Below are positions 6,047 to 61,167 of a stretch of 64,000 bases of DNA, piece after piece. The first letter of the stretch is position 1, and every line of letters starts with the position of its first letter. The stretch comes from Euprymna scolopes (Eukaryota). Both the position numbers and the translations under genes were made by a program. The notes below the pieces were generated by a model, which was given only the letters and a program-made list of their open reading frames with translations, did no database searches and was not told the origin of the DNA. The DNA lies in the NCBI GenBank assembly GCA_053919585.1, contig CM132795.1. One strand, given 5' to 3'.

Positions 6047-6049
<3 letters not shown>

Positions 6050-6147
6050 CATAATTCACGTTGACACACCGGATCACTGAAGTTAAGCAACGTTGAGCTC
6101 TGGCAGTACTAAAAAAATGGGTGACTATTTGGAAATTCCAGGTGCTG
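6047..6147 (+). mobile_element. 5S rRNA-derived SINE head (internally deleted)
   Basis: cacgttgacacaccggatcactgaagttaagcaacgttgag...agtact...atgggtgac...ggaaattccaggtgctg aligns with metazoan 5S rRNA, including boxes A and C. Confidence 0.8.
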
Positions 6148-8189
6148 AATCGGAATCGTATTGTTAAAAAAAATACCTTAGATTTACAATTCTTTCATTA
6201 CGATTCTCTTATGTTTTTAAGTTGAACTGTTTGTTTGAAGTGAGAAAATGCTGTCAAAAAAATTATGATAAAAACGTCATAGAACTTTGCATAACATATT
6301 TAATGATATACAAGAATTTTATTAACTACTTTAAAGGTAATTTTTATTTATCTTAATGAGTTTTTTATTGCGTCACATACATAGGCGCTGTCTGTTTCGA
6401 AACTTCGAGGCTCATGATTAGTTATGTTTGCACTGTTGCGAAACTTTAGGGGCCGCGAGGTAACATTGTCTCATTTGTGAGCGAAGTTTATTTATATATA
6501 AAACAGCCTAACTACGTCAAGTCCATGAAAAGGTTGATGAATACTTAACCTTTGGAGAAAAAAGATTTTACAGTGCTCTCATTGTGAGTAAATTATGTTA
6601 AATCAGTGGTTTTTCCAACTGGTGACTAAAAAAGGGGGGGCTTAACTTTTGGCAAGTTTTTTTTTTTTTTTTTTTTTAACGACACTTCCATTAGTAAATG
6701 AATAAAAAATCTCATTAGTAAATGAAAAATGTCTTGTCAACCTTTATATTTAAAAAAAATAAAACAAGCAAAGTCAAATTATTTAAACAATGAGAGGTTT
6801 AACAGAACAATATATGTACTTTCTATTTTCTGAACGAAGGCTGTTTCAGGAAATAGTTCTAAAACTAAAGTGAAATTGATCACGTGGTATCACTTCGCAA
6901 AACTTTGATAGTCAGTCGGCCTTTTTAAAGTATCCAAAAACAAAAGTGTCAGAACTATATATTATGCTGACTGACGGTTCCACTTACAGTCTTTCGAAAA
7001 CTACAAAAGAAAACAATCATTTTGTTATCTGTTAAATAAATACGGTAACTGAATTTAATTTTTTTTTCTTTTAAAATATTCTGCGAATGAAGCAATTAAA
7101 CATTTCTTTTAGAACTTCTTTGCACAACAAAAACAAAAAAAAAATGTGAAAAAGTTATTAAAAAAGGAAAAAAGTTCAACCTTTTTTTTTTTTTTAATCC
7201 TTTGAACCCTAACATTGCAAACTAACTAATCACTCAGAGCCTAAAGGACTGTAGAGGTTTAGTCGACATTCACCGATGCGTGGTATCATAGTCGTGATGT
7301 GAGCATAGGTAAATGTTTCCCAACCCCTAACAAAAAATAAAAAGGTTGTCAGAAACAGCATTAATAACCTTTATTTAACAATAGAAATAAACAATTACCA
7401 AAAATTTAGTTTTTATATAGAAATAAAGATGTAAATTAAGACATTAAATAAGAATAAACATTAAACGACGATAAGTATATAATTATATGATAAAAATAAA
7501 TATAGAAATAAACCAATTTAGATTAAAAAAATAACGTTATTATTGTTAAAAATATTTATAAAAAAGTCAAATAAATAGGAATAATTTAAAACGATTGAAT
7601 ATAAAAGGCTAAAAATTTAATCAAAGATTTAGTTATTTTTAAATTTCATTTTGAAATAAGAATATTCTAGAAAGTGGAATAAAAATCAGTTAGCGATTGA
7701 AGCTGCAAAAAAAAAAGTTAAATTTTAAAGAGTTATCGAAGATAAAGAGAAAATAAAACAAAAAAAATGAATATCAAAAGATAAACAAAACATGTTATTC
7801 CCCTTGAAATTTGATGTTATTGTATTTTTATTGAATTAATCATGACTTACTTTTTCTTTATATTTTTTAATATATAAAATAACTCTTTTAATTGATTGTT
7901 ATTAATTTCATGGTGCATGTTTAATTCATGGTTAAAATATTTGTTTTTTACCTTTATCTTCAATGAAATAAATTTTACGAAAAAAAAAAATCAAACCGTT
8001 TTCGAAATTCCCTTAATTGTATTTCCACTTTTTTGCTGTACAAATTTTTTTCGCTACACAAAAACGTTCGGTTATATAATGGTATATTTCAAAACAACAA
8101 TTCCACGGGAATCGGAATCGTACTTGGTATCGGAATCGTTAATCAACATTTTCCTGGAATCGGAATCGGAAAAAATTAGGAATCGTTCC

Positions 8190-8249
<60 letters not shown>

Positions 8250-8255
<6 letters not shown>

Positions 8256-8982
8256 AGCTGAATGTGTGTGTGGTCACGAATAGGCTCCTATATGGTTGAC
8301 TATTTTAAAAAACTGATTACATATAATAATAGAAGATGTATCGAGACACAGGAATGGGTATGTTTGATCTAGCAGAACGGTGGCTCATTAAAATTATGGG
8401 GTCTGTGTTCGCGCCTGGTCCACAAAGTATGGAAATAAAAAATTAAAAAAAAAAAAACGTTTACAAGTGTTTTTGATATAGATGTACATAAGAATACTTT
8501 GATAAGTATGTTTTAACTTAAATAGGAATGGTATAATAAAATTGTGGGGTCTGTGCTCGCGCCTAGCCTCCATAGAATGGGAATAGGCACAAACTTTAAT
8601 AAAGACTTTTCATATCTATCTGCATAAGTATACTTTGATAATTGTTTCAGTTTGAAGAAATATGGTATAATAAACTATGGGGTGTTCTTTCGCACCCGAC
8701 CTCCATAGAATGGAAATATGTCACAAAGTTTAACAAGGTTTTTTTAATATAGATCCACAGAATATTGTGATAAGTGTTTCAGTGTGAACAGGTATGGTAT
8801 AATAAATTATGGGGTTTATCTATTTTATCTTCACTTTCATCATATTTTGCTTTGGTTTTGATACCCCCAAATTCGAAGCTATCTCTTTATAACCCTTCCT
8901 TTTCATAACCTATCATACTTTCATAAGAGTCCATTTTCTGTAGGCTGTTTTTGAACCCAGTCAAGGACGTGTACTTTTGCTA

Positions 8983-9039: not shown

Positions 9040-10639
9040 CATTGTATGGAGTCTAAGGGTTGATCAAGGTTTCAACATTTTAATGTCTCCTGAAGTCTTC
9101 AAGGTAATCTCAGTCAAAATAATTTTTTCCCCCCAGAATGCCACCATAAACACAAAAAGGATGACCCCTCCCTTTTTCTACTTTCGATCCTTTGGTAGAC
9201 ACTAATCTTCTCCCTCGTAGGTCGTCTATGTCAACCACATATACTTAATTAACTTAGTGGCCTTGTTCCTTGGACCACAGAGGGCCTGCAAAGCTGGCCG
9301 GTGGAAGAGTAATTTAATCGCACATTATTTGGTGCTAACGACTAAACAAATAGCAAAAATAAAACATAAAAAAAGATCTATGCGGTCTGGTCAGAAGTGT
9401 TTTATTATGGTAAGACTAGTTTACATATCATATCTATGCTAGATCTATTTTTTAAAACTAGTGAAGCTAAACATCACTATTTACCTTACACTGATTTGTT
9501 AATTCAGTTAAATGAATTTATCGGCATTTGCCCCTAAACTAAACTCTTCATCTTGACTAATAATAGATATTCTCTTCATTATTCGCGTCTGTTCCCATTT
9601 TATTCTGCAATGTCTTCCGGTTGCATGTTTATACGCAAAACAAAATCCCAGATGTAGTAAAGTACACCTTTAAAACAATGTTTTGTTGAAGTTCATTATT
9701 TCTGTCTGTCTCTTTGCTGTTGCTTCCCACATGCACATCCCCAATTCCTTGATGTACGTTATTTTAATTTGATGCTTTTCTTCGCTCATTATCTCCCCCC
9801 CCCTTATTATTGTATGACATTTTGGTTTTCCCCTTATATTTACATTTCCTCTTTATTTCTCTCGTCTTTCTCCACTCGTCACTCCTCATTTCTCTTTATC
9901 TTTTTTCATCCATGCTTCTTCTCATATTTCTTCATCTCTCTTCGTTTTCTCCAGCCCTTACTTAGTTTCTTTTCATCTCTCATCTCCATTTCTTTTCATC
10001 TCTTCCTTTCTTTTCATCCCTCACCTTCGCGTCTCTTCATCCCTCACCTTCGCGTCTCTTCATCCCTCTTTCTCTTCAGCCCTCTTTCTCTTCAGCCCTC
10101 TTTTTCCTTATCTTCACCCTCTACCTTCTCTTCTCACACATCCTCCTTTTTTTTTCGTTTCTCCCTCCTCTCACTAAAATTAAATATTGGCTTTCTTTCA
10201 AAAGTTACCTTTTGTTTATTTATGCTTTGATTTTGTGCACCTACAAAAACATCGAAGGAGTTACTGATTTGCTAACAGCTTCGTTTTCATTTTAAAACTT
10301 CCTTTGACTGCGACATTAGTTTCGCTTTTGTTTCTATCCTTCCACCCCACCACTAAAAGTCGAAAAGATAAAAGATCTAAAATCTTAATAAAAGAAAACA
10401 TTTTCCATTTCAATTAAATCTTTTTCTTAGTTTTCTTCTTCCATTAATGCTGATTACATTTCTATTCCAAATAGATTGGATATTGGTTACTGTGAGTCTT
10501 AGATTCTCAAAACCAACCCAACAACCCCTCTCTTATCTCGATTACTTCTTGCCATCTCCTTATCAGCTTTATATGACCTTCCTCCTGAATTAATGTCATG
10601 TTACAAAGTATTTAGATATGATTTTCCTCTATCTCCACA

Positions 10640-10676
<37 letters not shown>

Positions 10677-12567
10677 GTCTCGACATGTCCCTCTCTTTCT
10701 CTGTCTCGACATGTCCCTCCCTCTCTCTCTCTCTTTGTCTCGACATGTCCCTCTCTCTCTCTGTCTCGACATGTCCCTCTCTCTCTCTGTCTCGACATGT
10801 CCCTCCCTCTCTCTCTCTCTTTGTCTCGACATGTCCCTCTCTCTCTCTGTCTCGACATGTCCCTCTCTCTCTCTGTCTCGACATGTCCCTCCCTCTCTCT
10901 CTCTCTTTGTCTCGACATGTCCCTCTCTCGACATGTCCCTCTCTCTCTCTCTGTCTCGACATGTCCCTCTCTCTCTCTGTCTCGATATGTCCCTCTCTCT
11001 CTCTGTCTCGACATGTCCCCCTCTCTCTCTGTCTCGACATGTCCCCCTCTCTCTCTCTGTCTCGACATGTCCCCCTCTCTCTCTCTCTNNNNNNNNNNNN
11101 NNNNNNNNNNNNNNNNNNNNNNNNNNNNNNNNNNNNNNNNNNNNNNNNNNNNNNNNNNNNNNNNNNNNNNNNNNNNNNNNNNNNNNNNNNNNNNNNNNNN
11201 NNNNNNNNNNNNNNNNNNNNNNNNNNNNNNNNNNNNNTCTCTCTCTGTCTCGACATGTCCCCCTCTCTCTCTCTCTNNNNNNNNNNNNNNNNNNNNNNNN
11301 NNNNNNNNNNNNNNNNNNNNNNNNNNNNNNNNNNNNNNNNNNNNNNNNNNNNNNNNNNNNNNNNNNNNNNNNNNNNNNNNNNNNNNNNNNNNNNNNNNNN
11401 NNNNNNNNNNNNNNNNNNNNNNNNNNNNNNNNNNNNNNNNNNNNNNNNNNNNNNNNNNNNNNNNNNNNNNNNNNNNNNNNNNNNNNNNNNNNNNNNNNNN
11501 NNNNNNNNNNNNNNNNNNNNNNNNNNNNNNNNNNNNNNNNNNNNNNNNNNNNNNNNNNNNNNNNNNNNNNNNNNNNNNNNNNNNNNNNNNNNNNNNNNNN
11601 NNNNNNNNNNNNNNNNNNNNNNNNNNNNNNNNNNNNNNNNNNNNNNNNNNCCGTCTCTCTCTCTCTGTCTCGACATGTCCCCCTCTCTCTCTCTCTGTCT
11701 TTCTCTCTCTGTCGCTCCACGTGTCTCTCTCTCTCTGTCGCTCCACGTGTCTCTCTCTCTCTGTCGCTCCACGTGTCTCTCTCTCTCTGTCGCTCCACGT
11801 GTCTCTCTCTCTCTGTCGCTCCACGTGTCTCTCTCTCTCTGTCGCTCCACGTGTCTCTCTCTCTCTCTGTCGCTCCTCGTGTCTCTCTCTGTCGCTCCAC
11901 GTGTCTCTCTCTCTCTCTGTCGCTCCTCGTGTCTCTCTCTCTCTCTCTGTCGCTCCACGTCTCTCTCTCTCTCTCTGTCGCTCCACGTGTCTCTCTCTCT
12001 CTCTGTCGCTCCACGTGTCTCTCTCTCTCTGTCGCTCCACGTATCTCTCTCTCTCTCTGTCGCTCCACGTGTCTCTCTCTCTCTCTGTCGCTCCACGTGT
12101 CTCTCTCTCTTTCTGTCGCTCCAAGTCTCTCTCTCTCTCTCTGTCGCTCCACGTGTCTCTCTCNNNNNNNNNNNNNNNNNNNNNNNNNNNNNNNNNNNNN
12201 NNNNNNNNNNNNNNNNNNNNNNNNNNNNNNNNNNNNNNNNNNNNNNNNNNNNNNNNNNNNNNNNNNNNNNNNNNNNNNNNNNNNNNNNNNNNNNNNNNNN
12301 NNNNNNNNNNNNNNNNNNNNNNNNNNNNNNNNNNNNNNNNNNNNNNNNNNNNNNNNNNNNNNNNNNNNNNNNNNNNNNNNNNNNNNNNNNNNNNNNNNNN
12401 NNNNNNNNNNNNNNNNNNNNNNNNNNNNNNNNNNNNNNNNNNNNNNNNNNNNNNNNNNNNNNNNCTCTCTGTCGCTCCACGTGTCTCTCTCTCTCTCTCT
12501 GTCGCTCCACGTGTCTCTCTCTCTGTCGCTCCACGTGTCTCTCTCTCTCTCTCTGTCGCTCCACGTG

Positions 12568-12599
<32 letters not shown>

Positions 12600-12710
12600 C
12601 ACGTGTCTCTCTCTCTCTCTGTCGCTCCACGCGTCTCTCTCTCTCTCTCTCTGTCGCTCCACGCGTCTCTCTGTCGCTCCACGCGTCTCACTCTCTCTCT
12701 CTCTCTCTCC
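10640..12710. repeat. Compound (CT)n-interspersed minisatellite with two spacer domains; contains assembly gaps
   Basis: (CT)n-GTCTCGACATGTCC units run to ~11690, then (CT)n-GTCGCTCCACGTGT units. This explains all six ~700-aa low-complexity ORFs. Confidence 0.95.
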
Positions 12711-13049
12711 ATCTTTTTCTGTCTCCACCGTTTCTTTCTACTCGTCTTTCTCTCTGCCTCTCTTTCTCCTACTCTCACACAAAAGGCCTAAAAGAAATTC
12801 ACGTTTGGTATGTTTAATACATTTAATATTTCCATTGGGGGTAAAAAAATAAAAAAAGATACAAGGAAATTTGTCATGAAATCTTTTCCAGCGAACATTT
12901 TGTTAGTCAAGATTTGACATTTCGTATTAACGTCTCCACCAGTAAAAAGAAATGATTTCATTATTTTATTATTGTTCCTAATTTCCTTTCTTTGATACAT
13001 TCAGCGAGTAAAAAATACGAATCCGATGTTAGTTTTTTCTTTCTTTGCT

Positions 13050-13470
13050 TTTTACTATATTATAAAGGCAAAAGGGCACGTGAGGGTAAGGGTTAATGGG
13101 ATAGAATAATTATCAGTTGGGAGATCAAAACCTTTATGAGAGGATTGATGGGAGGAGGGTTAAAAAACTTGGGGAGAGTGATTTATGACAGGAATCTGTC
13201 GACATTTGATTTGAAGACAACTATGTTGTAATCTGCAAGAAATCAGTCCCATGGTAATGTGCTCTCTAGACAAGAGGCTCTTGTTAAGAAGCTCTATTTT
13301 GGAAAATTCAGCCTAATGCTAGACATACAGAGAAAAAGTTTTCTGGGTTTTTTGGGGGTTTTTTTTCACTGTAGCAGGAAAATTAATTTTTGCTGTGTAT
13401 ATTTTACAAGGATAAATCAGATTGGATCTCAGTTAAGCACCTTCCATGGAAATAACAAAAAACTAAACGG
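13050..13470 (-). mobile_element. Degenerate CR1-group LINE 3' fragment
   Basis: Homologous to 2030-2450 (gagggtaagggtt; gacatttgatttgaagac; ccttccatggaaataac). Confidence 0.65.
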
Positions 13471-13479
13471 AGTGACATT

Positions 13480-13686
13480 CACCCTATGTGGGTTAAGTCG
13501 ACTTCTTCCAATAGGAGGCAGTTTCTAGGGAATATTAAATTTGCAAGTTATCCCCAGTCGCATTATATCACGATCAGAACGATGTTAGGTTTTACAGTTC
13601 TTGCAAAGATGTGGATGTCACCAATCTGATTGTTTAACTTCAGTGATCTAATGAGAACCAGTTTGTTAACATGGTTATGTCATACG
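13480..13686 (-). mobile_element. 5S-derived SINE (partial head plus body)
   Basis: ttaacttcagtgatctaatgagaaccag is the 5S 5' half. The body motif cagttcttgcaaaga and ccccagtcg are shared with 49930-50065 and 32303-32450. Confidence 0.7.
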
Positions 13687-13935
13687 TAGAAATAATCATA
13701 GAGGGAGACTAGCAACATCTCTTCTGTAAAAGGGGATTTGTAAGGAGCAGTAAAGATCATTCCCCACTAAATGTTGAATTCGATTTTAAACTTTTTTTAA
13801 ACAAGAATGTTCTGCATGGCACTTCTTCAGATATGGCAAACATTCTTTGTTGTGACCGTTTTTCTAATTTATTTTTCAAATTTGTAAATCAATAACTGTT
13901 TTCATTTTAATAAAGACCACATTCTCAATAGATTG

Positions 13936-13971
<36 letters not shown>

Positions 13972-14201
13972 GAGAGGGGGGTAAATGGAGCATTTTAATT
14001 GGCCGAAAGGAACTGAAATTCTTATATTTAAAAAGTTATTTCTTTATCTATTGAACTATGATTTAATTTCGGTATACAAAGCTACCAAAACGTCATTTCA
14101 AGTTGGTTTAGCTTGAGCCGATATGATGTGAACGTACCTGAAATCATCAATGGAGCAGACACTTCACTGAAAATCAGGCTTGAATCATTAAACACACAAA
14201 A

Positions 14202-14236
<35 letters not shown>

Positions 14237-14504
14237 ATTAAAATAAGTATTGTTCTGGAAATCCAAGAGTGAAGTTATACCAGGAATTTGGGTGTGGCTT
14301 TCTCTGGGCTGTTTCTCTATTCTCTGTGGATGACGTCTTCATGTTGGAGTTCCTCTGGCTGGAACCGCTGCAGTCACCGTTTCGACGTTTAAGGCAGATC
14401 AAACAACGCAACACAAGTCGTATGTATAGAAAATCTTAAATATTTACTTTTACAAAAATATGATACAATATCTTACAATTTGAAACAACGACAATTAACT
14501 TCGA

Positions 14505-14718
14505 AATTTCGTCGATATCATAATAGATTATATCTATACTCCGATGAATTATTTTTTTTTTATGTATTGATATTCATATTAAAAACCCATGTATAAGAAA
14601 GTTGTATTTTCTTTTTAAATAAATAGGAAAAAGGGTTTTTAATATGAATATCAATACAAACAAAAAACAATTTATAGGAGTATAGATGTAATCCCTATTA
14701 TAATATCGACGAAATTGT
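14505..14718. repeat. Inverted repeat, ~85-bp arms
   Basis: aatttcgtcgatat...tattgatattcatattaaaaaccc (14505-14588) pairs with gggtttttaatatgaatatcaata...atatcgacgaaatt (14633-14718). Confidence 0.85.
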
Positions 14719-15039
14719 TTCAAATAACAAGTTCAATGAAGATGTTTCCGGCTTCAGAGCAAATATACTGGTTAATTGCATTCTATTGACCAAAGGAAAT
14801 AATGAATCCATGTGGGCATTTGCCGGGATAAAAAGTATTTTAAAAAAACTTATGAGTGTAGACTGTTTTTTATCCTCTTGATACGCCATTGCAAATATTA
14901 ATTCAACTTGCAATTATCAGCTAGTTCGTTGCATAATACATTTTTGGGAGCTTTAATATCGTTTTTATTTTGTCAGCGGGAATTTTTTTTGTTTTTTACT
15001 TGTTGTTTCACTACTTATCAACACCCAGAGTCCACTCAC

Positions 15040-15310
15040 AGAAAAAGGTAGATGGTGATACAAGATCAGACACATTGGAACTCTGGTAGTGTTGAACGAC
15101 TCGATAGGGATTTATTATTCACATTAGACTTGAAGACGACGATGTTATAGTCAGCCAGCAAGCAGACAAATAGTATTGCGTTCCACAGATGGGCAATTCT
15201 CAGAAACTCTGCTCATGGAATTTTCGTTTAGTTTTGAGCACAGATAGGAGTGAGGAAAAATGTTTTTTGGTTGCTGTAGCTGGGCAAGTATTTGCCTGCA
15301 TCTTATCAGC
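15040..15310 (-). mobile_element. CR1-group LINE 3' fragment
   Basis: ttagacttgaagacgacgatgttatagtcagc...ttccacagat...tcatggaatttt...gcacagatag is homologous to 2185-2350 and 60790-60960. Confidence 0.75.
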
Positions 15311-15655
15311 TTTTTGAAATGTCCGGTTTTCTTAAAATATCTAGATTCATTTAATTCATGCCAAAATGTAGGGTTTTTTTGGGTTTTTTTTATCATATAC
15401 ACAGTTTTGAACATCTAGTCTCAACTTGAGGTAGCTGCTGAAGCCAATATAATGCAAAGTGTCAGAAATCGTTAATGAACACTTATACATAGTTAAAGAT
15501 CAGCTTTGATGCATTGAAGAATATATAGGATCTGTCGTATGTATGTATACATACATACACACAAAATACATTTTGAATCCTAGAACAGTCAAGCTATGCC
15601 GACGAGCTGTAGTACAGAAAAACACGTGTTCGTAGATTGCTGCTCTGTGTGTATG

Positions 15656-15725
<70 letters not shown>

Positions 15726-17203
15726 CCTTTCATGTTACATCATGATTCCAGTAAACGGAGCAGCAACCGGACTTATGGAAAAGAATTTCAAAAACTACCT
15801 GGCAAATATACATAGTTAATCAAATGCTAGAGACGAACAATTTCCTCTAAAGAGAAGGTTAGAATCTTAAAACGATTTCTCAGTTGGAATGTTTGAGATA
15901 GCAGGTGAATATCTAGCATTTGGTAGGATGCCCCATCCTCAGCTTGAACAAAAAAAAAAAAAATAAGAAAAATAAAATAAAAATAGTCACTTATGGTGAA
16001 GTCTGTATCTTAGGATTTTATTTTTTTAAATCTTTCTCTAAAGCGACATCTCTTTTATTCACTTCTCACGTTAGTTGTGAGTTGCACGTGGTGTTTACTT
16101 CATACTCTCTTTATTAAATCGAACCATTAAACGTGCCTTTGATTGTGGCATACAAAATGAGGGCGGCTTTGATCCGTGTCTGCCTCTTTCAGAGCAAAGG
16201 TCAAATGCTAATGGGTTTTCTGTGCATTTGAGAGAACAGATACGGAAAGTGAGAATAAAAAATACTCCTTTTCTCCCCGGGCAGTTAAAGGATAACATAA
16301 GCATTCATCTTGAGTTTAGAAGCCTGAAGGAAATTGCAGTCAGAAAATTCCAACAAAATAGGCACAGGTGATGTACTTGCTGCTTCTCTACTTTCCTTTC
16401 GTTTCGCCTCAGGTAGTTCATATTAGTTTTCATTTTAAATGAGCTTTCTCTCTATTTCTCATCATCTATCTCTTGTTCACTCTCTCCCTTCCTACCTCTC
16501 TTTCCCGCTATCTCTTTCTTTCCCCTCTTACTCCCCCCACCCACTTTCTCTCTCCCTTTTATATAGTTTCCTTTTTTCTCTGCAACCTTTCTCTCTCTCC
16601 TCTTTCCATATCACCCCTTTCTATATCGCACCCTTTCCTCTCTATCTCCCTCTCTCTCTATCTTTTTATCTCCCTCCCTCTATCTCTCCATCCTCTCTCC
16701 CTGTATCTCTCCCTCCCTCGTCTCTCTTTTTCTTCCCCCCCTCTCTCTCTCCGCCCTCTCCCTCACCTCTCCCTTCTCTTCCTCTCTCTCCCCCTTCACC
16801 TCTCCCTTCCCTTTCTTTCTCTCTCTATCCATTTCTCCCTCTCCCCTTCTCTCTATATATATTTCTTTCCATTTCTCCCTTCCTTTTCTCTCTCCCTCGT
16901 TAACTGATTGTGAATCAATAACTTCAGCATCCAGCTTGGAAACATCTTTTCAGTTGAAACATTCTTGGCATTCTTCTACTGATTTGACTCTAAGAAAAAG
17001 GAATGCGTTCATCTACAGATATTTGGTTTTCACACACACAAAAAAAATGCATCAATAATACGGTTTCGGAAATTAACATTCTTTAAAATTAGGAAAAAAA
17101 TATTGGCTTAAACTAATTTCTATTTATCAGAAGTCTGCATGTTGTGATGATTGTGTGAAATTGCAAATTATCGGGGAGTCTTGGGTTGACTTTTTACGTC
17201 TAA

Positions 17204-17282
<79 letters not shown>

Positions 17283-18329
17283 AACTAATTAGCAATGTGA
17301 CAGTTCTTCTAATGTGTCTCCTCATTCTTTCTTGGCTTGTGTGTGTGTATTTATACATACATATATATGNNNNNNNNNNNNNNNNNNNNNNNNNNNNNNN
17401 NNNNNNNNNNNNNNNNNNNNNNNNNNNNNNNNNNNNNNNNNNNNNNNNNNNNNNNNNNNNNNNNNNNNNNNNNNNNNNNNNNNNNNNNNNNNNNNNNNNN
17501 NNNNNNNNNNNNNNNNNNNNNNNNNNNNNNNNNNNNNNNNNNNNNNNNNNNNNNNNNNNNNNNNNNNNNNNNNNNNNNNNNNNNNNNNNNNNNNNNNNNN
17601 NNNNNNNNNNNNNNNNNNNNNNNNNNNTAGATTATTTCTCGAACAGTACAGTTTTGCATCACTTATGTTCCCTTACCAAGATTAAAAGCAACAATGATAC
17701 TAAACCTTATGCTTTAAATCCTTATTTCAGTTTTTATCAAAATCAAGAACACGATTTTGATTCCGGAAAATGTCTAACATTTAAGCTTAACAGAAAAAAA
17801 AGAAATAAAATAAATTGAATTCAGACAATGGAGCTTAGTGTCTACTTTGCATTAAATTTAATGCAAATCTGAAATATCATTTCTGAAAGGGAAGGTTATA
17901 CTCATATCATGCCATTAAAGACCATTTAAAATGTTCCAAAAATAAAAGTTTGGGTAATATTTATGATTTCTAATACCTATCGTTCATATTTCATTAAATT
18001 TTTTAAATTTTCACGGAATTTTCACTAAAGGCTTTCACCGTCCTTTCTTTCTTACCTCTTTTGCATAGTACCGAAATAAACTAACTACATTAGGATAACT
18101 TACATCAAGAAGCTGTGAAGCTAAATTCATAATGATTAGTTAATTACTTTAGAAGTGAATCCTGTATATACCAATATAAAAACATAACGAACTCTTGTCA
18201 CCAATAATCTCTCAAGTCTGTTTTTTCGCTTTCTCTTATCCTCTTAGCTGGGCTTTCATCTCTCTCTCTCTCTCCTTTCATTTCGGCTTCTCTCTCCCTT
18301 CTTTCAACTGAACTTTCACATCTCTCTCT

Positions 18330-20500
18330 CCCTTCTTTTATCTGGGCTTTCGTATCTTTCTCTCCCTCCTTTCATCTGGGCTTTCGTATCTTTCTCTCCC
18401 TCCTTTCATCTGGGCTTTCGTATCTTTCTCTCCCTCCTTTCATCTGGGCTTTCGTATCTTTCTCTCCCTCCTTTCATCTGCGCTTTCGGATCTTTCTCTC
18501 CCTCCTTTCATCTGGGCTTTCGTATCTTTCTCTCCCTCCTTTCATCTGGGCTTTCGTATCTTTCTCTCCCTCCTTTCATCTGGGCTTTCGTATCTTTCTC
18601 TCCCTCCTTTCATCTGGGCTTTCGTATCTTTCTCTCCCTCCTTTCATCTGAGCTTTCACATCTCTCTCTCCCTTCTTTTATCTGGGCTTTCGTATCTTTC
18701 TCTCCCTCCTTTCATCTGGGCTTTCGTATCTTTCTCTCCCTCCTTTCATCTGGGCTTTCGTATCTTTCTCTCCCTCCTTTCATCTGAGCTTTCACATCTC
18801 TCTCTCCCTTCTTTTATCTGGGCTTTCGTATCTTTCTCTCCCTCCTTTCATCTGGGCTTTCGTATCTTTCTCTCCCTCCTTTCATCTGAGCTTTCACATC
18901 TCTCTCTCCCTTCTTTTATCTGGGCTTTCGTATCTTTCTCTCCCTCCTTTCATCTGGGCTTTCGTATCTTTCTCTCCCTCCTTTCATCTGGGCTTTCGTA
19001 TCTTTCTCTCCCTCCTTTCATCTGGGCTTTCGTATCTTTCTCTCCCTCCTTTCATCTGGGCTTTCGTATCTTTCTCTCCCTCCTTTCATCTGGGCTTTCG
19101 TATCTTTCTCTCCCTCCTTTCATCTGGGCTTTCGTATCTTTCTCTCCCTCCTTTCATCTGAGCTTTCACATCTCTCTCTCCCTTCTTTTATCTGGGCTTT
19201 CGTATCTTTCTCTCCCTCCTTTCATCTGGGCTTTCGTATCTTTCTCTCCCTCCTTTCATCTGGGCTTTCGTATCTTTCTCTCCCTCCTTTCATCTGAGCT
19301 TTCACATCTCTCTCTCCCTTCTTTTATCTGGGCTTTCGTATCTTTCTCTCCCTCCTTTCATCTGGGCTTTCGTATCTTTCTCTCCCTCCTTTCATCTGGG
19401 CTGTCGTATCTTTCTCTCCCTCCTTTCATCTGAGCTTTCACATCTCTCTCTCCCTTCTTTTATCTGGGCTTTCGTATCTTTCTCTCCCTCCTTTCATCTG
19501 GGCTTTCTTATCTTTCTCTCCCTCCTTTCATCTGAGCTTTCACATCTCTCTCTCCCTTCTTTTATCTGGGCTTTCGTATCTTTCTCTCCCTCCTTTCATC
19601 TGGGCTTTCGTATCTTTCTCTCCCTCCTTTCATCTGGGCTTTCGTATCTTTCTCTCCCTCCTTTCATCTGGGCTTTCGTATCTTTCTCTCCCTCCTTTCA
19701 TCTGGGCTTTCGTATCTTTCTCTCCCTCCTTTCATCTGGGCTTTCGTATCTTTCTCTCCCTCCTTTCATCTGGGCTTTCGTATCTTTCTCTCCCTCCTTT
19801 CATCTGGGCTTTCGTATCTTTCTCTCCCTCCTTTCATCTGGGCTTTCGTATCTTTCTCTCCCTCCTTTCATCTGGGCTTTCGTATCTTTCTCTCCCTCCT
19901 TTCATCTGGGCTTTCGTATCTTTCTCTCCCTCCTTTCATCTGGGCTTTCGTATCTTTCTCTCCCTCCTTTCATCTGGGCTTTCGTATCTTTCTCTCCCTC
20001 CTTTCATCTGGGCATTCGTATCTTTCTCTCCCTTCTTTCATCTGGGCTTTCGTATCTTTCTCTCCCTCCTTTCATCTGGGCTGTCGTATCTTTCTCTCCC
20101 TTCTTTCATCTGGGCTTTCGTATCTTTCTCTCCCTCCTTTCATCTGAGCTTTCGTATCTTTCTCTCCCTCCTTTCATCTGAGCTTTCGTATCTTTCTCTC
20201 CCTCCTTTCATCTGAGCTTTCGTATCTTTCTCTCCCTCCTTTCATCTGGGCTTTCGTATCTTTCTCTCCCTCCTTTCATCTGGGCTTTCGTATCTTTCTC
20301 TCCCTCCTTTCATCTGGGCTTTCGTATCTTTCTCTCCCTCCTTTCATCTGGGCATTCGTATCTTTCTCTCCCTTCTTTCATCTGGGCTTTCGTATCTTTC
20401 TCTCCCTCCTTTCATCTGGGCTGTCGTATCTTTCTCTCCCTTCTTTCATCTGGGCTTTCGTATCTTTCTCTCCCTCCTTTCATCTGGGCTTTCATATCTC
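18330..20500. repeat. 34-bp minisatellite array (~63 units)
   Basis: The unit CTGGGCTTTCGTATCTTTCTCTCCCTCCTTTCAT has period 34 (18376 to 18410). A variant unit CTGAGCTTTCACATCTCTCTCTCCCTTCTTTTAT is interspersed. Confidence 0.97.
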
Positions 20501-20574
20501 TCTCTCCTATCATTTAGATTTTCCTCTCTCTCTCTCTCCTATCATCTAGATTTCCGTCTGTCTCTCTCCTATCA

Positions 20575-20890
20575 TCTAGATATTCGTCTGTCTCTCCCTT
20601 TCTCTTATTTCGATATTCGTCTGTCGCTCCCTTTCTCTTATTTCGATATTCGTCTGTCTCTCCCTTTCTCTTATTTCGATATTCGTCTGTCTCTCCCTTT
20701 CTCTTATTTCGATATTCGTCTCTCTGTCCCTTTCTCTTATTTCGATATTCGTCTCTCTCTTCCTTTCTCTTATTTCGATATTCGTCTCTCTCTCCCTTTC
20801 TCTTATTTAGATATTCGTCTCTCTCTCCCTTTCTCTTATTTCGATATTCGTCTCTCTCTCCCTTTCTCTTATTTCGATATTCGTCTCTCT
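20575..20890. repeat. 33-bp minisatellite (~9 units)
   Basis: The unit TTTCTCTTATTTCGATATTCGTCTGTCTCTCCC has period 33. Confidence 0.95.
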
Positions 20891-22716
20891 CTCGTTACTC
20901 TCTCTCTCTCTCCTTTCTTTCATGTAGGGTTTTGTCTTTCTCACTCCCCCTCTTTTTCTTATCTAGGTTTGTGTGTGTGTCCTCTTTTATACTCTTTATC
21001 TAGGCACACACGCTTTTTTCAAATATTTAATCTTTATATCCGTTTATATCTTTTGTCCTTCCATAAACACAGCTATTCTAAACTATTTAGCAAATATTTT
21101 CTTATTACTTTCTTTTCATCTTTTTAATATTTCCACTTGGAATTTTACATTTTCCAGTCTCTCATCTCTGGAAATATCAAACTTTTCTTTTGCGTTTTCT
21201 ATCCTTGGAATCCTTTAAAGTGGAGACATACAGGCTGGCCTGTTCCAGGCTAAAGAAAGATTAAAACAAATTTCATTGATTTTGGTTATTGCCCATCCTC
21301 TGACCCCTACTTCTTACCACAATTGGCTTCAGACTCCAAATCTTACAGCTGACTACATGTTCCTCCCTAATCAGATCAGTCACATGGGCAGAGAAATGTT
21401 GGCGACAATGAAATGTTTGAGTTTGTTTGGAAGATGGGGGTGAGGAATTTTTGTAATGATAGCAATATTAATGTTAGCCTTGTTGTCTGAGAACTGGCAT
21501 GTTTCGGCTTCAGAAAACTTTCATAACATAACTGCAGCAGCCGTACAGACTGACTCGCTGAAACCTCTTGAAGGATTACAAGATACTGTCCGCTTTGTTA
21601 TTTTGATGTTTGTCTAAATTAGTTCGTGATCATTATTTTTTATGTGGACATCTCTTAATGCTCTAATTAAGGTAATTAAGCTACTCGTTATCTTAATTTT
21701 TATTTGTTTATTTACTATCTCCTTTCACGAGAAAGGGAGATAATCACACTTTTTATTTTTTTGTTTTGTTTTTGCACTCCTTTTTTTATTTTCGATAATT
21801 TAAAAAGCTTTGGCTTTATTTAGAATTCGTTAAATGACGATTGATTTATTTTTCAATGAATTTTCGATATCATCATACTACCACAATTGCAAAGAACTTT
21901 CCTTTTAGCCATTGTGTGTAGTATCAAACCGAACTTCTTTCTAAGAACCAAGAAATTGCTTCCTTGCAAACTACAACATGGTCATTTTCAAAGCCAATGT
22001 CAACATAGACTTGTCATAAACAGAAATGTTAAAATTCTGTGCGTTCCATTCATAATTCTCATAATATTCTTTATCATTTTAACTGACAATTCAACCATCT
22101 CATTAACTCTTCTGCTCTGTTAGCTTTTGGCTTTGATAAGCATGTATTTGATGGTGAAACCTTTATTTTGAAAACATTTTGGAGTGTGGAGTTACTTCTT
22201 AGTCACATTCTGAAGTGGTAGTACCTGTCGGGATTCCATCTAGGGGTTAAATAGAATATCTTAAATACTGAAGATAAAATTAAGCGTAATGCTTACCACG
22301 TTATGTCAAACAGAGCTTATATATTTTAATTCAGTAGAATGCAAACTTTACAACATGATTAATATTTTGTAATCATGCCCTAAAAATCAACACTTAACAA
22401 TATTTCTTCATATGTACATGTGTCAGAACTTTATTATTACAAAAGAGTAAAATGATTTTCCTCTTCAATATCAATGGCAATTCAGATAATTTCCAATGAA
22501 AATATTCACAATCAATTCAAAAACAAAAAGTCTAAATGGATGGACCAGGCTCTACACTTTTTTCTATAAGATGACAGACTTGACATGAAGTCAAGGAATA
22601 TTTCCGGATCGGATCGATTTAAAGAGCAGCCATTAACATTAACTTCAAGATAGTTTGTAATCGATTTTTTTTTTCAAAAGATTCGTTTGGAGAGATTAAA
22701 CCTTATGTAATAAAAG

Positions 22717-22773
<57 letters not shown>

Positions 22774-22936
22774 CGCCCTTAGTCGTTGTGTTCTGTCAGT
22801 TTTGCCGTTCGGGTTGGCTATTTCATAACGATAATGATCTGATATAAAACAACGTGTCATCTGGGTCGTAACTCTAACGCTTGACATTTTTCATTTCCAT
22901 TTTTTTAATACGTTACGAGAATGTGGGGAGATACTG

Positions 22937-22978
<42 letters not shown>

Positions 22979-23609
22979 GTGTGTTCTAAGGGTATGTTGA
23001 AAAATCAAAATACTATATCATAATCATAAAAATGTGAGAGCCAAAAAAAATTATTTTAAACGAATCTGTGATGTATAGTAATATACAAATAATTCATTAA
23101 TATTAAGAATTTGAAAAATAAAATCTTTTACCAAAATAATTGAATTCGATATTAAATCAACCTAAAAGGGTTGATATGCCGTAAAGAAAAAAAAAACTCC
23201 GTTCTTTCTTTGAGTTTCAATGTGTATAATTTCCGAAATGTGGTATTGTTCTTTGCATGTCTTAAACTATTTTTTCAATTTTGGTCGCTGTCATTTTAAC
23301 AATGCTTCAACCATTGTCTTCTCTCGCCTTCTTCATGCGCTTTTGTTATAGTGGATTAAATAAATGTTACTAATTATGACAAAATATGACCAAAGATGGC
23401 TGAAACGTAAAAATGGTGGCAACCAATACAAAGAAACCCGTTCAAAAAATGTAAATATTGTTTTTCTTTAAGTACCAATGATATATACTTTTTACTTTTT
23501 TTTTCTTGCTTTCCGGACTTCAGTATACAACCCCCCCTCTCTCTTGTTTTCTCTCTGTGTACTCTCTCCCTCTTTTTCTTTGTGTTTTAGGTTTCTGCCT
23601 CTTTCTCTT

Positions 23610-23965
23610 CTCTTCTTCCTCTTCTCTACCACGGTTCGCTTTTACTCTCTCTCTCCTGAGGTTTCTGTCTCTTTCTCTTCCCTCCTCTTTACCAAGGTTC
23701 TCTTGCTTCCCCCACCCCCACCACTCTCTCTCATGATTAAACCTCTTCCTCTTCCCTTCTTCCCCTTCTCTACCACGGTTCGCTTTTACTCTCTCTCTCT
23801 CTCTCTCTTCTGAGGTTTCTGTCTCTTTCTCTTCCCTCCTCTTTACCAAGGTTCTCTTGCTTCCCCAACCCCCACCACTCTCTCTCATGATTAAACCTCT
23901 TCCTCTTCCCTTCTTCCCTTTCTCTACCAGGGTTCGCTTTTACTCTCTCTCTCTTCTGAGGTTTC
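23610..23965. repeat. Pyrimidine-rich ~150-bp tandem duplication (about 2.5 copies)
   Basis: ctctaccacggttcgcttttactctc...tgaggtttctgtctc...accaaggttctcttgcttcccc...catgattaaacctc is repeated. Confidence 0.9.
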
Positions 23966-25591: not shown

Positions 25592-25761
25592 TGAAGTGCA
25601 GAAAGCAGTTCAAACAGCTCAGGGTTTGTACATGAGATGGTGTGAACTGCAAGATGACCCCGGATCTATTACCAAGGAGGAACTTGATTGGACCACTAAT
25701 GAACTACGCAATAGTCTCCGTAGTATCGAGTGGGACCTGGAGGACTTGGAAGAAACAATAA
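25592..25761 (+). CDS. STX6: Syntaxin-6/10 family t-SNARE, internal coding exon (N-terminal Habc domain; equivalent to vertebrate exon 2)
   Basis: Polypyrimidine tract plus CAG acceptor (AG at 25590-25591). Translates (1 nt)+[56 protein letters not shown]+(1 nt), closely matching the syntaxin-6 N-terminal motif [24 protein letters not shown]. Similarity stops exactly at a U12 donor. Confidence 0.95.
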
Positions 25762-25771
25762 ATATCCTTTT
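25762..25771 (+). promoter_or_regulatory. U12-type (minor spliceosome) AT-AC 5' splice site
   Basis: ATATCCTTTT is a perfect match to the U12 donor consensus RTATCCTTT, in phase 1 directly after the ETI codons. Confidence 0.92.
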
Positions 25772-26028
25772 CTTCATCTTTTGTTTTTCGATTCCATTAC
25801 GTTGTATGCTTATTATTTCATCGTTATGGAAATCAATTGGAATTCCTTTTATCTTTAAAACGAGTAAGTTCATCTTTTTATTATAATTATTATCCATTCA
25901 TCAATTTATGCTTCATATATTAATAAATTAACCAATATAGTTGTATCAATTGCTTTATTTATAGATGAGAATGCTCGATATCCTGGAAGAGCTTATATAA
26001 AGTTTTGACATAGAGATAACTCTGTCTT

Positions 26029-58532: not shown

Positions 58533-58577
58533 GCACCTGGAGAAAATCAGAGGTCACATCGGTTGAAACGTTGTGAG
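58533..58577 (+). ncRNA. Minimal hammerhead motif (Penelope-type), degenerate
   Basis: gcac-CTGGAGA-aaatcagaggtcacatcggtt-GAAA-cgtt-gtga. Confidence 0.45.
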
Positions 58578-59259
58578 AATAACACTAAAGATAAGAGTAG
58601 TCTGAATAATCCAAATAATAGAAAATATACTTTCTAATATTTTTTTCGACTTCTTTTGAACTGCTTCTCTGTCGTTATCGTTTAATTGGATGAATGACCA
58701 ATTTGGGATGCAGATGCTCTATATAAAACATGGTCCTACTGAATTTGCAAGCTGAAGATTTGTATTATGAAGATAAGAATCCTGGACCGTTTGTTGTAAT
58801 CTACACCAACTAGACACTGGCTGGTGATGAAAAATCTAATTCAGAAAATGTACTAAAAGGAGGAAGCGTAAAACAAAGAACAATGGATCTTTCCATTATA
58901 TTACAAAGAGAAAAATAAAATGTATTCAATTTAAATTAGTGGAGAACATGATGTATATTACCTGTATGGACAAAGTAAAAGTGTTAAGCTATGTAAATAT
59001 TTATTTTATTCTTATAATCGCCTGTAATGAGGATTAAAGTGTCAATCTTAGGACTTATCATATGCAATGCCTTTATATGTTTTACCATGTGGGAGTTAAA
59101 GGTACAATCCCAACAATAACTAAGAATAAATAAAAAATTTATATTGTTTAGCACTTCTATCCAATCATGGTTAACAGATTAAAAAATCTATCATCATGGA
59201 TTAAATAAAAGCTTCAGTTTAAAATTTTGTGTCGGTTCTCGAGTTTGAAAAGATGCTTT

Positions 59260-59850
59260 CTTTTTTGTTTTTGTTTTTTTAACTAAGGATCACCACATAT
59301 CAAAATTTTTTGTTTTTGTTTTGTTTTTAAACTAAGGATCACCACATATCAAAATTTTTTGTTTTTGTTTTTTTTAAACTAAGGATCACCACATATCAAA
59401 ATTTTTTGTTTTTTTTTTAACTAAGGATCACCACATATCAAAATTTTTTGTTTTTTTTTAACTAAGGATCACCACATATCAAAATTTTTTGTTTTTGTTT
59501 TTTTTTAAACTAAAGATCACCACATATCAAAACCCAAGGTTAATGAGTATTTAGTAGACTGAGACAACATGATCGATAATGATAGAACTTGTGCAGAGTT
59601 TGATTATTTAAGAGGACGGTTAAACAGGAACTTGTTTGTATTAGATTTTAAAACGACCATGTTATAGTCAGCTGGGAAACAGGCCTGTGGTATTGTGTTC
59701 CACTGATCGACAGTCCTATGAAAGAAACTTTGCTCTTGGGAGTTTTTGCTTTGTTTTAGGCACTAGTAGAGAGTAAGGGAAATTATTGACAGTTGTTGTG
59801 GCTAGTAGATTATTTGTTGCAAATGTTTTGCAGGGAGGCCATAGGTTGAA
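59260..59850 (-). mobile_element. CR1-group LINE 3' fragment whose terminus and tail are tandemly repeated six times (59260-59535)
   Basis: The unit (T-rich)aactaaggatcaccacatatcaaaa resembles the family 3' end (T)n-ggtatcaccacattatcaagg at 60630. The LINE body continues at 59535-59850. Confidence 0.75.
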
Positions 59851-60567
59851 GCTCAGTCGAGCTTATTTAAAGTTGAAGATTACATTGGGCAAAATGCTGT
59901 GAAAATAGCATCCAAGATAATAATAACAATCAAAACAATGGAAATTATCAAAAAAAAAAAAAAAATCTGCAAATTCAGTTATATTCTGTAAAATGATTAA
60001 AAAATAACTTTTGTTGCAACTCTCTAGAAGAAGAAACATTTATAGCACAACTCTGCATCCCTACTGTGATAAAAATCAGAAGTGCAGAGTTTATGAATTA
60101 TGTTCAGCTATTTACGATCGGCACATGATATATGACGGTACTTATTCATTTGAATTGCTTATAACTATCTAGGGGAGGCTATATATTAATAAGTGTATGA
60201 ATTATTGTGCATTCGTTTCCACATTGCAAGTTTTCATAGCAACAACACTCATTATAGTGCTTTGTATCGTCTAACAGCAGATTATGACAGAGAAAAAGAA
60301 GAGTTAACTCGGATGGATAGAAAAAAAAAGGAAAGTAATTCATTATTAAAAGTTAACACTAAATCAGTTTTCTTATAAAATTTTATATACAACTTATTAT
60401 ATATACTAGCAGGACCTGTGGAAATTCCATAGCGGCATCTTTCATCTATTATATAAGTCTTACCTGTCTATTAAAATGCATGTATGTATGTATGTATGTA
60501 TGTATGTATGTCTGCCTTTTTTTGGGGTGAGGGTGCTGGGCCCCACACCCAACCTTCCCAGAAGGTA

Positions 60568-61167
60568 CATACAGCACCTAGTTTCCCAAATGGTCACCCA
60601 TCTGGTACTGGCCAGGCTCAATGTTTTTGTTTTTTTTGGTATCACCACATTATCAAGGCCAAGAGGCCACTCAAGGATAAGGGTTAAAGAGTGTACAGTA
60701 GAAATTGGACAATATAGTAATCAATAGTAATGAAAATTCAGTAAATTTGATAACTTATATGGAACGGCTCATCAAGAACTTATTTACATTAGACTTGAAC
60801 ACAACCATATTGTAGTCAGCCGGAAAGCAGGAAAACGGAAGACAATTCCGCAGGCATGCAGTTCTAAGAAAGAAGCTTTGTTCATGGAATCTATGTTTAG
60901 GTTTAGGCACAGATAAAGAGTGGGGGGAATTATTGATAGTGTTTTCAGCTAGACGAGTGTTTCTTGCAAAAGTTAGGCGAGGGAGGGCCATAGACAGAAG
61001 CTCAGTCGAACACTTTCCATGAAAATAACGATACATCAGAGACAAACTCGCAACATTTCTTCTGTGAGATAGAGGTTGCAGGGAAGAGAACAGGACATCT
61101 CCTATGATGTTGTTTAACTTCGATGATCTGGTGAGAACCGGTGTGTGCCAACATGATTGTGCCATAT
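60568..61167 (-). mobile_element. 5S-derived SINE head split by a CR1-group LINE fragment (LINE at 60626-61106)
   Basis: The 5S 3' half is at 60568-60625 and the 5' half at 61107-61167, with ATGTT on both sides of the insert. The insert encodes GDVLFSSLQPLSHRRNVASLSLMYRYFHGKCS...FKSNVNKFL. Confidence 0.9.

What the first reader, a model, noticed from the sequence alone, without database searches (positions are those of the whole stretch)
6047..61167. Abundant 5S rRNA-headed SINE family with a shared non-5S body
Seen: about ten 5S-like segments in 64 kb (6047, 13620, 32192, 36695, 44783, 45765, 49080, 49870, 50066, 60568/61107). They share diagnostic changes relative to 5S (CATAATCA; AGTACCAGATGGGTGACCATYTGG). 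At least three continue into the same ~150-bp body (caagaactgtaaaa...tgggg...ggttcaacct). The changed segment CCAGATGG-GTGA-CCATCTGG is a perfect hairpin, so the 5S helix was kept. Known: 5S-derived SINEs (SINE3 class) are much rarer than tRNA-derived SINEs. Inference: one master element, possibly an undescribed family in this lineage.
Basis: partly seen in the sequence, partly recalled or inferred. Interest (0 to 1): 0.7.

Follow-up and report, generated by a model that had tools for sequence, protein, structure and literature searches.

The report
Abundant 5S-headed SINE families
The window holds eleven decayed copies of short retrotransposed elements whose front end is a modified 5S ribosomal RNA gene. 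They belong to a very abundant, old and probably extinct group of at least four SINE families in a large cephalopod-type genome, a lineage that published annotations describe as almost free of SINEs.

Summary
All ten or eleven listed places are real 5S-like segments (nhmmer E 1e-8 to 5e-77), and three pass Rfam's 5S gathering score.

They are not copies of the real 5S gene. That gene sits in a 270-bp tandem array on another contig. It differs from the element head at about 20 of 120 positions, and its spacer is unrelated to the element body. All 53 heads examined carry the same derived changes.

Family 1 is about 285 bp:
- a 118-nt head that still folds like 5S, with helix I changed on both strands and helix IV made perfect;
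- a body of about 115 nt;
- a tail of about 50 nt with two hairpins, and no poly(A).

Full-length copies start at 5S position +1. 12 of 33 keep 9-15 bp target-site duplications, against 1.9% in controls. 5'-truncated copies exist. This is a SINE3-type retroposon.

"One master element" is too simple. Family 1 has at least two subfamilies, and at least three further families join the same head to other 3' modules.

Rough abundance is 1e5 to 1e6 head-bearing copies. The best copies lie about 5% from consensus, so the family looks extinct. I found no partner LINE and could not check Repbase or Dfam.

The scan has already noted this family several times on other DNA of this genome.

The parts
6045..6149 (+). 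Head-only 5S-SINE copy (model 4-113, with an internal deletion). Its 5' end abuts a long (TA)n run. The 3' module is unclassifiable.
   Evidence: nhmmer E 1.3e-21; sequence read
13471..13685 (-). Family 1 copy with an internal deletion: head positions 3-83, then body and tail 126-280.
   Evidence: nhmmer E 2.8e-11 and 4.3e-25; body and tail profile hits
32192..32460 (+). Family 1 copy, essentially full length (model 2-278): head, body and two-hairpin tail.
   Evidence: Rfam 5S 42.7 bits; nhmmer E 4.9e-63
36619..36803 (-). Family 4 copy: the same derived 5S head (36696-36803), followed by a different 3' module (..CCAGGTTGG..GGGGACGTGTTTAA..) that is shared with L004:3109-3222 and L019:3135-3156.
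   Evidence: nhmmer E 2.9e-24; module comparison z = 6.8
44779..44944 (+). Head (2-124) joined directly to the last ~43 nt of the family 1 tail (238-280). The body is missing, either as a deletion derivative or as a short variant.
   Evidence: Rfam 5S 49.9 bits; nhmmer E 2.8e-30 and 8.7e-5
45753..45817 (-). Head fragment (model 9-76).
   Evidence: nhmmer E 1.1e-8
49096..49171 (+). Head fragment (model 51-120), followed by an A-rich stretch.
   Evidence: nhmmer E 2.2e-12
49858..49925 (+). Head fragment (model 42-105). It abuts the truncated 3' end of the 49936-50179 copy in the opposite orientation, so one copy is nested in or adjoining the other.
   Evidence: nhmmer E 8.2e-10; sequence
49936..50179 (-). 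Family 1 copy (model 2-263) with the best-kept head in the window. The tail is cut after GGTTCAACCTA.
   Evidence: Rfam 5S 75 bits with only two non-standard pairs; nhmmer E 5e-77
60516..60625 (-). 3' half of a family 2 copy: head 57-117 plus a ~50-nt module (CCTTCTGGGAAGGTTGG..CCCTCACCCC) ending in an A-run and then (ACAT)n. The module is shared with L070:2496-2557.
   Evidence: nhmmer E 1.2e-16; module comparison z = 20
61107..61167 (-). 5' half (model 3-61) of the same family 2 copy. A 481-bp insertion with an A-rich end (60626-61106) separates it from its 3' half.
   Evidence: nhmmer E 2.5e-10; sequence

Best explanation
These are old copies of SINE3-type retroposons: non-autonomous, RNA polymerase III-transcribed elements whose 5' module descends from a 5S rRNA gene.

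Shown:
- One derived 5S head (83% identical to the genome's real 5S gene) is common to all copies.
- That head is joined to at least four different 3' modules.
- Full-length copies begin at the base that corresponds to 5S +1.
- Copies have 9-15 bp target-site duplications, some are 5'-truncated, and they are scattered over all chromosomes.

Inferred mechanism:
- The 5S-type internal control region (box A, intermediate element, box C) recruits TFIIIA, TFIIIC and TFIIIB.
- Pol III starts at +1 and reads through the whole element, because the 5S terminator is gone and the consensus holds no TTTT. It stops in flanking DNA.
- The reverse transcriptase of a still unidentified 'stringent' LINE recognises the 3' stem-loops and copies the RNA into a staggered nick (target-primed reverse transcription).
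- New families arose by swapping the 3' module behind the same head.
- The head kept the 5S fold through changes on both strands. This suggests selection on master copies for a 5S-like RNA shape (promoter factor or RNP binding, or stability).

The family looks extinct. The best copies are ~5% from the subfamily consensus; typical copies are 10-16% away.
For: 5S homology
- Rfam RF00001 scores 75, 49.9 and 42.7 bits in the window and 64 bits in L004.

Not the real gene
- The true 5S scores 115 bits and lies in a 270-bp tandem array at C18:127.4-128.2 Mb.
- The head matches it at 100 of 120 positions, and the spacer is unrelated to the body.
- All 53 heads share the derived states, for example 50/50, 49/51 and 44/45.

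Fold kept
- The head consensus folds into the three-way 5S shape at -44.1 kcal/mol, against -39.4 for the real 5S.
- Helix I changed on both sides (GCU..AGC to AUA..UGU), and helix IV became a perfect 8-bp stem.

Element limits and anatomy
- Taken from an alignment of 30 genomic copies.

Retroposition marks
- 12 of 33 copies have TSDs scoring at least 9, against 1.9% when flanks are mismatched.
- L064 and L068 are 5'-truncated.

Tail hairpins
- 88% of cells are paired, against 38-63% when the partner is slid.
- One pair is A-U in 16 copies, C-G in 5 and U-G in 2.

Transcription and subfamilies
- The consensus has no TTTT.

Other families with the same head
-.

Abundance
- 11 copies lie in 62.8 kb of window, plus 8-9 untargeted copies in ~110 kb of flanks.
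- The first-look search gave 6,255-7,937 DNA candidates and 277,239 rough 5S candidates.
- 9,700-26,000 contigs per run were laid on one copy at 85% likeness or more, some spanning the head-body junction, in runs of four organism labels.
Against: - No partner LINE was found. The tail and body never occur without the head in the ~280 kb I could read.
- Pol III transcription and TFIIIA dependence are inferred from sequence only.
- The covariation in the tail rests on one or two subfamily-level events, not many independent ones.
- The copy-number estimate rests on a small sample. Part of it (the flanks of chosen copies) may be biased towards SINE-rich DNA.
- The 38 genomic family 1 copies were picked as best matches, so their divergence underestimates the family average.
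Confidence: 0.9

Rival explanations
1. Dispersed 5S rRNA pseudogenes or orphons: copies of the real 5S gene and its spacer scattered by retroposition or unequal exchange.
For: Strong 5S similarity. Several copies are head-only.
Against: None of 53 heads has the real gene's states at the diagnostic sites. The real gene's 151-bp spacer is AT-rich and unrelated to the body. Head-only copies also carry the derived SINE states. Defined non-5S modules follow the head in four families.
Confidence: 0.02
2. A non-autonomous LTR element (Cassandra/Ajax-like TRIM) or a MITE that carries a 5S-derived promoter.
For: Such 5S-bearing LTR elements exist in plants and nemerteans (PMC10886601). Some window copies lie close together (49096, 49858 and 50179; 60566 and 61107).
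Against: The 33 full-length copies are single units with unique DNA on both sides and TSDs of variable length (9-15 bp) directly at their ends. There are no terminal inverted repeats and no paired direct LTRs. The close pairs in the window are explained by an insertion into a copy and by nested or adjacent copies.
Confidence: 0.02
3. The biology is the same, but the family is already catalogued (a Repbase SINE3 entry, or an automatic Dfam family for a cephalopod assembly), so nothing here is new.
For: Repbase and Dfam hold many unpublished SINE3 entries, and chromosome-scale cephalopod assemblies have been through RepeatModeler (PMC13218726). This scan itself has met the family repeatedly.
Against: No paper in the searchable library describes a cephalopod or mollusc 5S SINE or prints its motifs. 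Published annotations report almost no SINEs in Decapodiformes (PMC13218726, PMC8967140). That suggests the family sits among 'unclassified' repeats.
Confidence: 0.35

Closest known systems
SINE3 of zebrafish (Kapitonov & Jurka 2003), the founding 5S-derived SINE class
   Same: A full-length 5S-derived head with a type 1 internal promoter, then a non-5S body and a LINE-like 3' tail without poly(A). Dispersed and high in copy number, with TSDs.
   Different: The host phylum differs (mollusc, cephalopod-type), and the head derives from a mollusc-type 5S. The body and tail cannot be compared here because no Repbase sequences are available. Here one head serves at least four different 3' modules.
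HaSE3 (Helicoverpa), CoeSINE5 (coelacanth) and SINE-1_Pmo (python): SINE3 families with RTE-derived 3' parts (PMC5786205, PMC3272025)
   Same: A 5S head fused to LINE-derived 3' sequence. Families in one genome share tails or heads by module exchange.
   Different: An RTE origin for this body or tail could not be shown. The only RTE/Ceph strings quoted in PMC5786205 are absent, and no RTE 3' end could be fetched.
AmnSINE1, LmeSINE1 and SacSINE1 (5S head + tRNA remnant + Deu domain)
   Same: A 5S-derived promoter module at the 5' end of a composite SINE.
   Different: No tRNA-like remnant was detected (ARAGORN and Rfam found nothing beyond 5S). The Deu domain could not be tested.
Ceph-SINEs of squids and cuttlefish (SepiaSINE, Sepioth-SINE, OegopSINE, IdioSINE; Akasaki 2010, re-analysed in PMC5786205)
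   Same: Probably the same host group. Composite SINEs with a conserved body.
   Different: Ceph-SINEs have tRNA heads and a CORE-like plus RTE-5'UTR domain. This family has a 5S head and lacks the quoted Ceph motifs.
Cassandra and Ajax (TRIMs with 5S promoters in their LTRs; PMC10886601)
   Same: A 5S-derived Pol III promoter co-opted by a non-autonomous retroelement.
   Different: This family has no LTR structure. It shows single units with variable TSDs and 5' truncation, the marks of LINE-type integration.

Membership tests
SINE (general) | Short, non-coding, dispersed, high copy number | tested here: met
   About 285 bp. Copies lie on all large contigs. 19 untargeted copies were found in ~173 kb. 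10-26 thousand contigs per run matched one copy.
SINE (general) | Head derived from a Pol III-transcribed small RNA, with its internal promoter | tested here: met
   Full-length 5S match. The box C core AGATGGGTGACC and the box A region AAGTTAAGCAAC are identical to the genome's own 5S. Promoter activity itself is not testable here.
SINE (general) | Target-site duplications and 5' truncation, the marks of target-primed reverse transcription | tested here: met
   12 of 33 copies have 9-15 bp TSDs, against 1.9% in controls. L064 and L068 start at model positions 176-182.
SINE (general) | 3' tail shared with a partner LINE | tested here: inconclusive
   The tail was not found apart from the head in ~280 kb. 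The metagenome scan gave one unrelated hit. LINE loci could not be cut out.
SINE3 (5S-derived SINE) | Head homologous to 5S rRNA rather than tRNA or 7SL | tested here: met
   RF00001 scores 43-75 bits over model positions 1-120. No tRNA was found by ARAGORN.
SINE3 (5S-derived SINE) | Distinct from the host's functional 5S gene and spacer | tested here: met
   83% identity to the array gene. The derived states are fixed in 53 heads. The spacer is unrelated.
Ceph-SINE superfamily | tRNA head plus Ceph domain (CCTTGGGAAAG core; RTE 5'-UTR-like part) | tested here: not met
   The head is 5S. The best match to the 11-mer has 4 mismatches, and the 23-mer is absent even at 5 mismatches or fewer. Only the strings quoted in PMC5786205 could be tested.
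Deu / CORE / V / Nin / Meta / Snail domain superfamilies | The named conserved central domain in the body | not testable with these tools
   No Repbase, SINEBase or Dfam sequences are available. Rfam finds nothing in the body or tail.
5S rDNA / 5S pseudogene | Sequence of the real gene, with or without its spacer | tested here: not met
Cassandra/Ajax-type TRIM | 5S-bearing LTR pair with an internal PBS and short fixed TSDs | tested here: not met
   Copies are single units with unique flanks and variable 9-15 bp TSDs.

The most novel reading that the evidence does not exclude
5S-headed SINEs (four or more families on one derived head) may be a major repeat class of decapodiform cephalopod genomes, overlooked until now. 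They would number some 1e5-1e6 copies, about 1-2% of the DNA. That would make the published 'near absence of SINEs' in squids and cuttlefish, and the idea that SINE expansion is octopus-specific, artefacts of automatic repeat classification. The head's retention of the 5S fold through changes on both strands would then point to selection for a 5S-like RNP in the retroposition cycle.
Probability: 0.4. Interest if true: 0.55.

Novelty: new member of a known kind. Interest (0 to 1): 0.4.

Why it matters
5S-derived SINEs are rare compared with tRNA-derived ones. As far as the searchable literature shows, none has been described from molluscs.

Here one derived 5S head serves several families with different 3' modules. 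That is a clear natural example of modular SINE evolution by tail exchange.

If the host is a squid or cuttlefish, as size, chromosome count and earlier notes suggest, the abundance contradicts published statements that Decapodiformes have almost no SINEs (PMC13218726, PMC8967140). Comparisons of repeat landscapes between octopus and decapodiform lineages would then need revisiting.

The family could also give many presence/absence markers for decapodiform phylogeny.

Tried and rejected
1. Partner LINE
- Tail-only and body-only profiles run over all held DNA found nothing outside head-bearing copies.
- The ten best tail matches in the genome were all SINE copies, two of them 5'-truncated.
I did not try to obtain those letters by another route.

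2. A metagenome scan for the 22-nt tail core returned one unrelated GC-rich contig.

3. Ceph-domain and RTE strings quoted in PMC5786205 are absent.

4. Rfam at E <= 1 finds nothing in the body or tail. ARAGORN finds no tRNA in the window.

5. In my sample, 3 of 46 intact 5' ends lie next to (TA)>=4, against a 2.6% background (p = 0.11). The claim is not supported.

6. Organism name
- Run and organism names are coded, so I could not confirm the species.
- Four runs with different organism labels all cover the unique flank of one copy with 0-3 differences per ~100 bp. They are therefore the same or sister species, and the cross-species range of the family remains open.

7. Average-linkage clustering did not separate the subfamilies. 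Diagnostic columns did.
Full report
**Setting**

The window is G000:C13:65,472,001-65,536,000 of a 5.9-Gb assembly of 925 contigs. Hits fall on contigs C1 to C46, many above 100 Mb, and G+C is about 32%. This fits a decapodiform cephalopod, whose haploid number is 46 (PMC13218726). Earlier notes of this scan call it a squid/cuttlefish-type genome (not checked by me). Run and organism names were coded, so the species stays unconfirmed.

Rfam's 5S model passes its gathering score at three places: 50064-50180(-) with 75 bits, 44778-44894(+) with 49.9 bits, and 32191-32308(+) with 42.7 bits.

Three copies continue into the same body and tail: 13471-13685(-), 32192-32460(+) and 49936-50179(-). A fourth, 44779-44944(+), has the head joined to the last ~43 nt of the tail.

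The N runs lie in or near CT-rich minisatellites and at least 1 kb from any copy. The finding is a set of separate insertions, so continuity across the gaps is irrelevant. I filled nothing in.

**Not the real 5S gene**

The genome's functional 5S genes score about 115 bits. They form a tandem array at C18:127.4-128.2 Mb, plus a single copy on C5. Each 270-bp unit holds the 119-bp gene and a 151-bp AT-rich spacer; I read 299 complete units.

- The element head matches the gene at 100 of 120 aligned positions.
- The spacer is unrelated to the element body: local score 14, shuffles 14.8 +/- 2.1.
- In 53 head-bearing copies from the window and 38 other loci, each derived state is nearly fixed (50/50, 49/51, 44/45, and so on). 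No copy looks like the real gene.

All copies descend from one already modified head, not from repeated retroposition of 5S rRNA.

**Anatomy of family 1**

An alignment of 30 copies with flanks gives sharp limits. The head covers positions 1-118, followed by a body of about 115 nt and a tail of about 50 nt. The tail holds two hairpins: CTTCCTCC-TTTG-GGAGGAAG, and TT[A/C]A(A)CCC-loop-GGGT[T/G]A[G/A]. The element then ends ..GTGCCGTTTCC. In subfamily A this is followed by one to three ATTCC-like units or a few variable bases. There is no poly(A).

Rfam finds nothing beyond 5S in the element, and the consensus holds no TTTT.

The head consensus folds into the canonical three-way 5S shape at -44.1 kcal/mol; the real gene folds at -39.4. 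Helix I differs from the real gene on both strands (GCU..AGC became AUA..UGU).

Across 31 tails, 88% of cells in the two named hairpins pair, against 38-63% when the partner is slid by one to three columns. One pair of the second stem is A-U in 16 copies, C-G in 5 and U-G in 2. This is covariation between subfamilies, so only one or two events. It is suggestive, not proof.

**Marks of retroposition**

- Full-length copies start within a base or two of the position that corresponds to 5S +1.
- 12 of 33 copies keep flanking direct repeats of 9-15 bp scoring at least 9, against 1.9% when 5' and 3' flanks of different copies are paired.
- L064 and L068 are 5'-truncated copies that start in the body.
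- Copies lie on all large contigs with unique flanks.

Together with the absence of LTRs and TIRs, this makes the element a SINE of the 5S-derived (SINE3) class.

**More than one master**

Diagnostic columns split family 1 into subfamily A and subfamily B.

| Subfamily | Copies | K2P to own consensus | K2P outside CpG |
|---|---|---|---|
| A | 18 | 0.10 | 0.078 |
| B | 11 | 0.156 | 0.136 |

The two consensus sequences are 7.6% apart, mostly in the body and tail, and there are some intermediates. About half of the consensus CpGs have decayed to TpG or CpA. The best genomic matches to a near-consensus copy are only 88-91% identical to it. The youngest copies therefore lie about 5% from consensus, and the family looks extinct.

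Most untargeted copies are 'head-only' with respect to family 1. Comparing what follows their heads shows at least three further families on the same derived head.

| Family | Copies seen | 3' module | Support |
|---|---|---|---|
| 2 | window 60516-60625 with 61107-61167; L070 | ~50-nt module ending in an A-run | z = 20 |
| 3 | L002; L065 | body of about 135 nt | z = 13 |
| 4 | window 36619-36803; L004:2999-3222; L019 | different module again | z = 6.8 |

'One master element' should therefore be replaced by 'one head, several 3' modules'.

**Abundance**

The window has 11 head-bearing copies in 62.8 kb. The flanks of 38 other loci (~110 kb) hold 8-9 more.

- That is about one copy per 9 kb, or some 1e5-1e6 copies genome-wide and roughly 1-2% of the DNA.
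- Family 1 alone has 5 untargeted copies in ~173 kb, which puts it on the order of 1e5.

These are rough figures. The sample is small, and the flank part may be biased.

Independent hints agree on the order of magnitude. The first-look search gave 6,255-7,937 DNA candidates and 277,239 rough 5S candidates. In four public runs, 9,700 to 26,000 assembled contigs lay on one copy at 85% likeness or more. They covered head, body and tail, and some contigs bridged the head-body junction.

Words of that copy occur in runs of eight coded organism labels from eight studies. However, the four runs I laid also cover the copy's unique flank with only 0-3 differences per ~100 bp. They are the same or sister species, and the wider taxonomic range is still open.

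**Mechanism (inferred)**

The box A region and the box C core are identical to the real gene. The likely cycle is:

1. TFIIIA-dependent Pol III transcription starts at +1.
2. Transcription reads through the terminator-less element into flanking DNA.
3. The reverse transcriptase of a stringent-type LINE recognises the 3' stem-loops.
4. The RNA is copied into a staggered nick by target-primed reverse transcription.

I could not identify the LINE. Tail and body never occur without the head in the DNA I could read. A metagenome scan gave one unrelated hit.

**Comparison with what is known**

The closest kinds are:
- zebrafish SINE3;
- the RTE-tailed SINE3 families HaSE3, CoeSINE5 and SINE-1_Pmo (PMC5786205, PMC3272025);
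- the 5S-headed Deu SINEs.

Ceph-SINEs of squids and cuttlefish have tRNA heads, and their quoted motifs are absent here. Cassandra/Ajax-type LTR elements are excluded by the single-unit structure and variable TSDs.

No paper in the searchable library describes a mollusc or cephalopod 5S SINE or prints this family's motifs. Repbase, Dfam and SINEBase could not be consulted. Two genome papers state that Decapodiformes have almost no SINEs (PMC13218726; PMC8967140, under 1% of repeats in Euprymna). If the host is a decapodiform, that statement reflects unclassified repeats rather than absence.

**Earlier notes of this scan**

The same family has been noted repeatedly elsewhere in this genome.
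- I agree with those notes that it is a real, old 5S-headed SINE with TSDs and twin 3' hairpins.
- One claim does not hold in my sample: that it lands mostly in (TA)n microsatellites. 3 of 46 intact 5' ends lie next to (TA)n, against a 2.6% background (p = 0.11).

**Verdict**

The SINE3 reading is supported, and 'one master' is not. I rate it a new member of a known kind, of moderate interest.

Noticed in passing
L031-L060 (G000:C18:127.4-128.2 Mb; one copy at C5:158595083-158595201): The functional 5S rDNA is a tandem array of 270-bp units (119-bp gene plus 151-bp AT-rich spacer). Among 299 units read there are 112 distinct gene sequences. One recurrent variant (GCCGTGTC for GCCTGGTC) occurs in 28 units.
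   Followed up: partly
window 60626-61106: A 481-bp insertion with an A-rich end on the minus strand splits a family 2 5S-SINE copy. It is probably another retroposon flanked by a short duplication of AACAT-like target. It is not classified.
   Followed up: no
window 30006-30470: A U2 snRNA-like 5' segment (..GGCCTTTTGGCCAAGATCAAAGT..) is interrupted by ~290 bp. The interruption is flanked by a repeat of CAAGATCAAAGT, and the U2-like sequence then resumes (GTAGTATCTGTT..).
   Followed up: partly
window 10657-12709 and 18291-20893: CT-rich minisatellites (28-86 bp units) hold three of the N runs. A 34-bp satellite is repeated 65 times at 94% identity (18291-20507). These explain the strong strand skews at 8-24 kb.
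   Followed up: partly
G000:C30:16748160-16789549 (L066, L067): The same family 1 insertion, with identical flanks and TSD, recurs at least five times within ~41 kb. This is a tandem or segmental duplication that post-dates the insertion.
   Followed up: partly
window 49858-50179: Two 5S-SINE copies lie tail to tail in opposite orientation. The family 1 copy is cut at model position 263 exactly where an inverted head fragment begins. This is either a nested insertion or a rearranged integration.
   Followed up: no
family 1 copies in L002-L030 and L062-L070: About half of the consensus CpG dinucleotides are now TpG or CpA, while only 7-12% of other sites changed. These interspersed copies therefore show methylation-type CpG decay.
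   Followed up: partly
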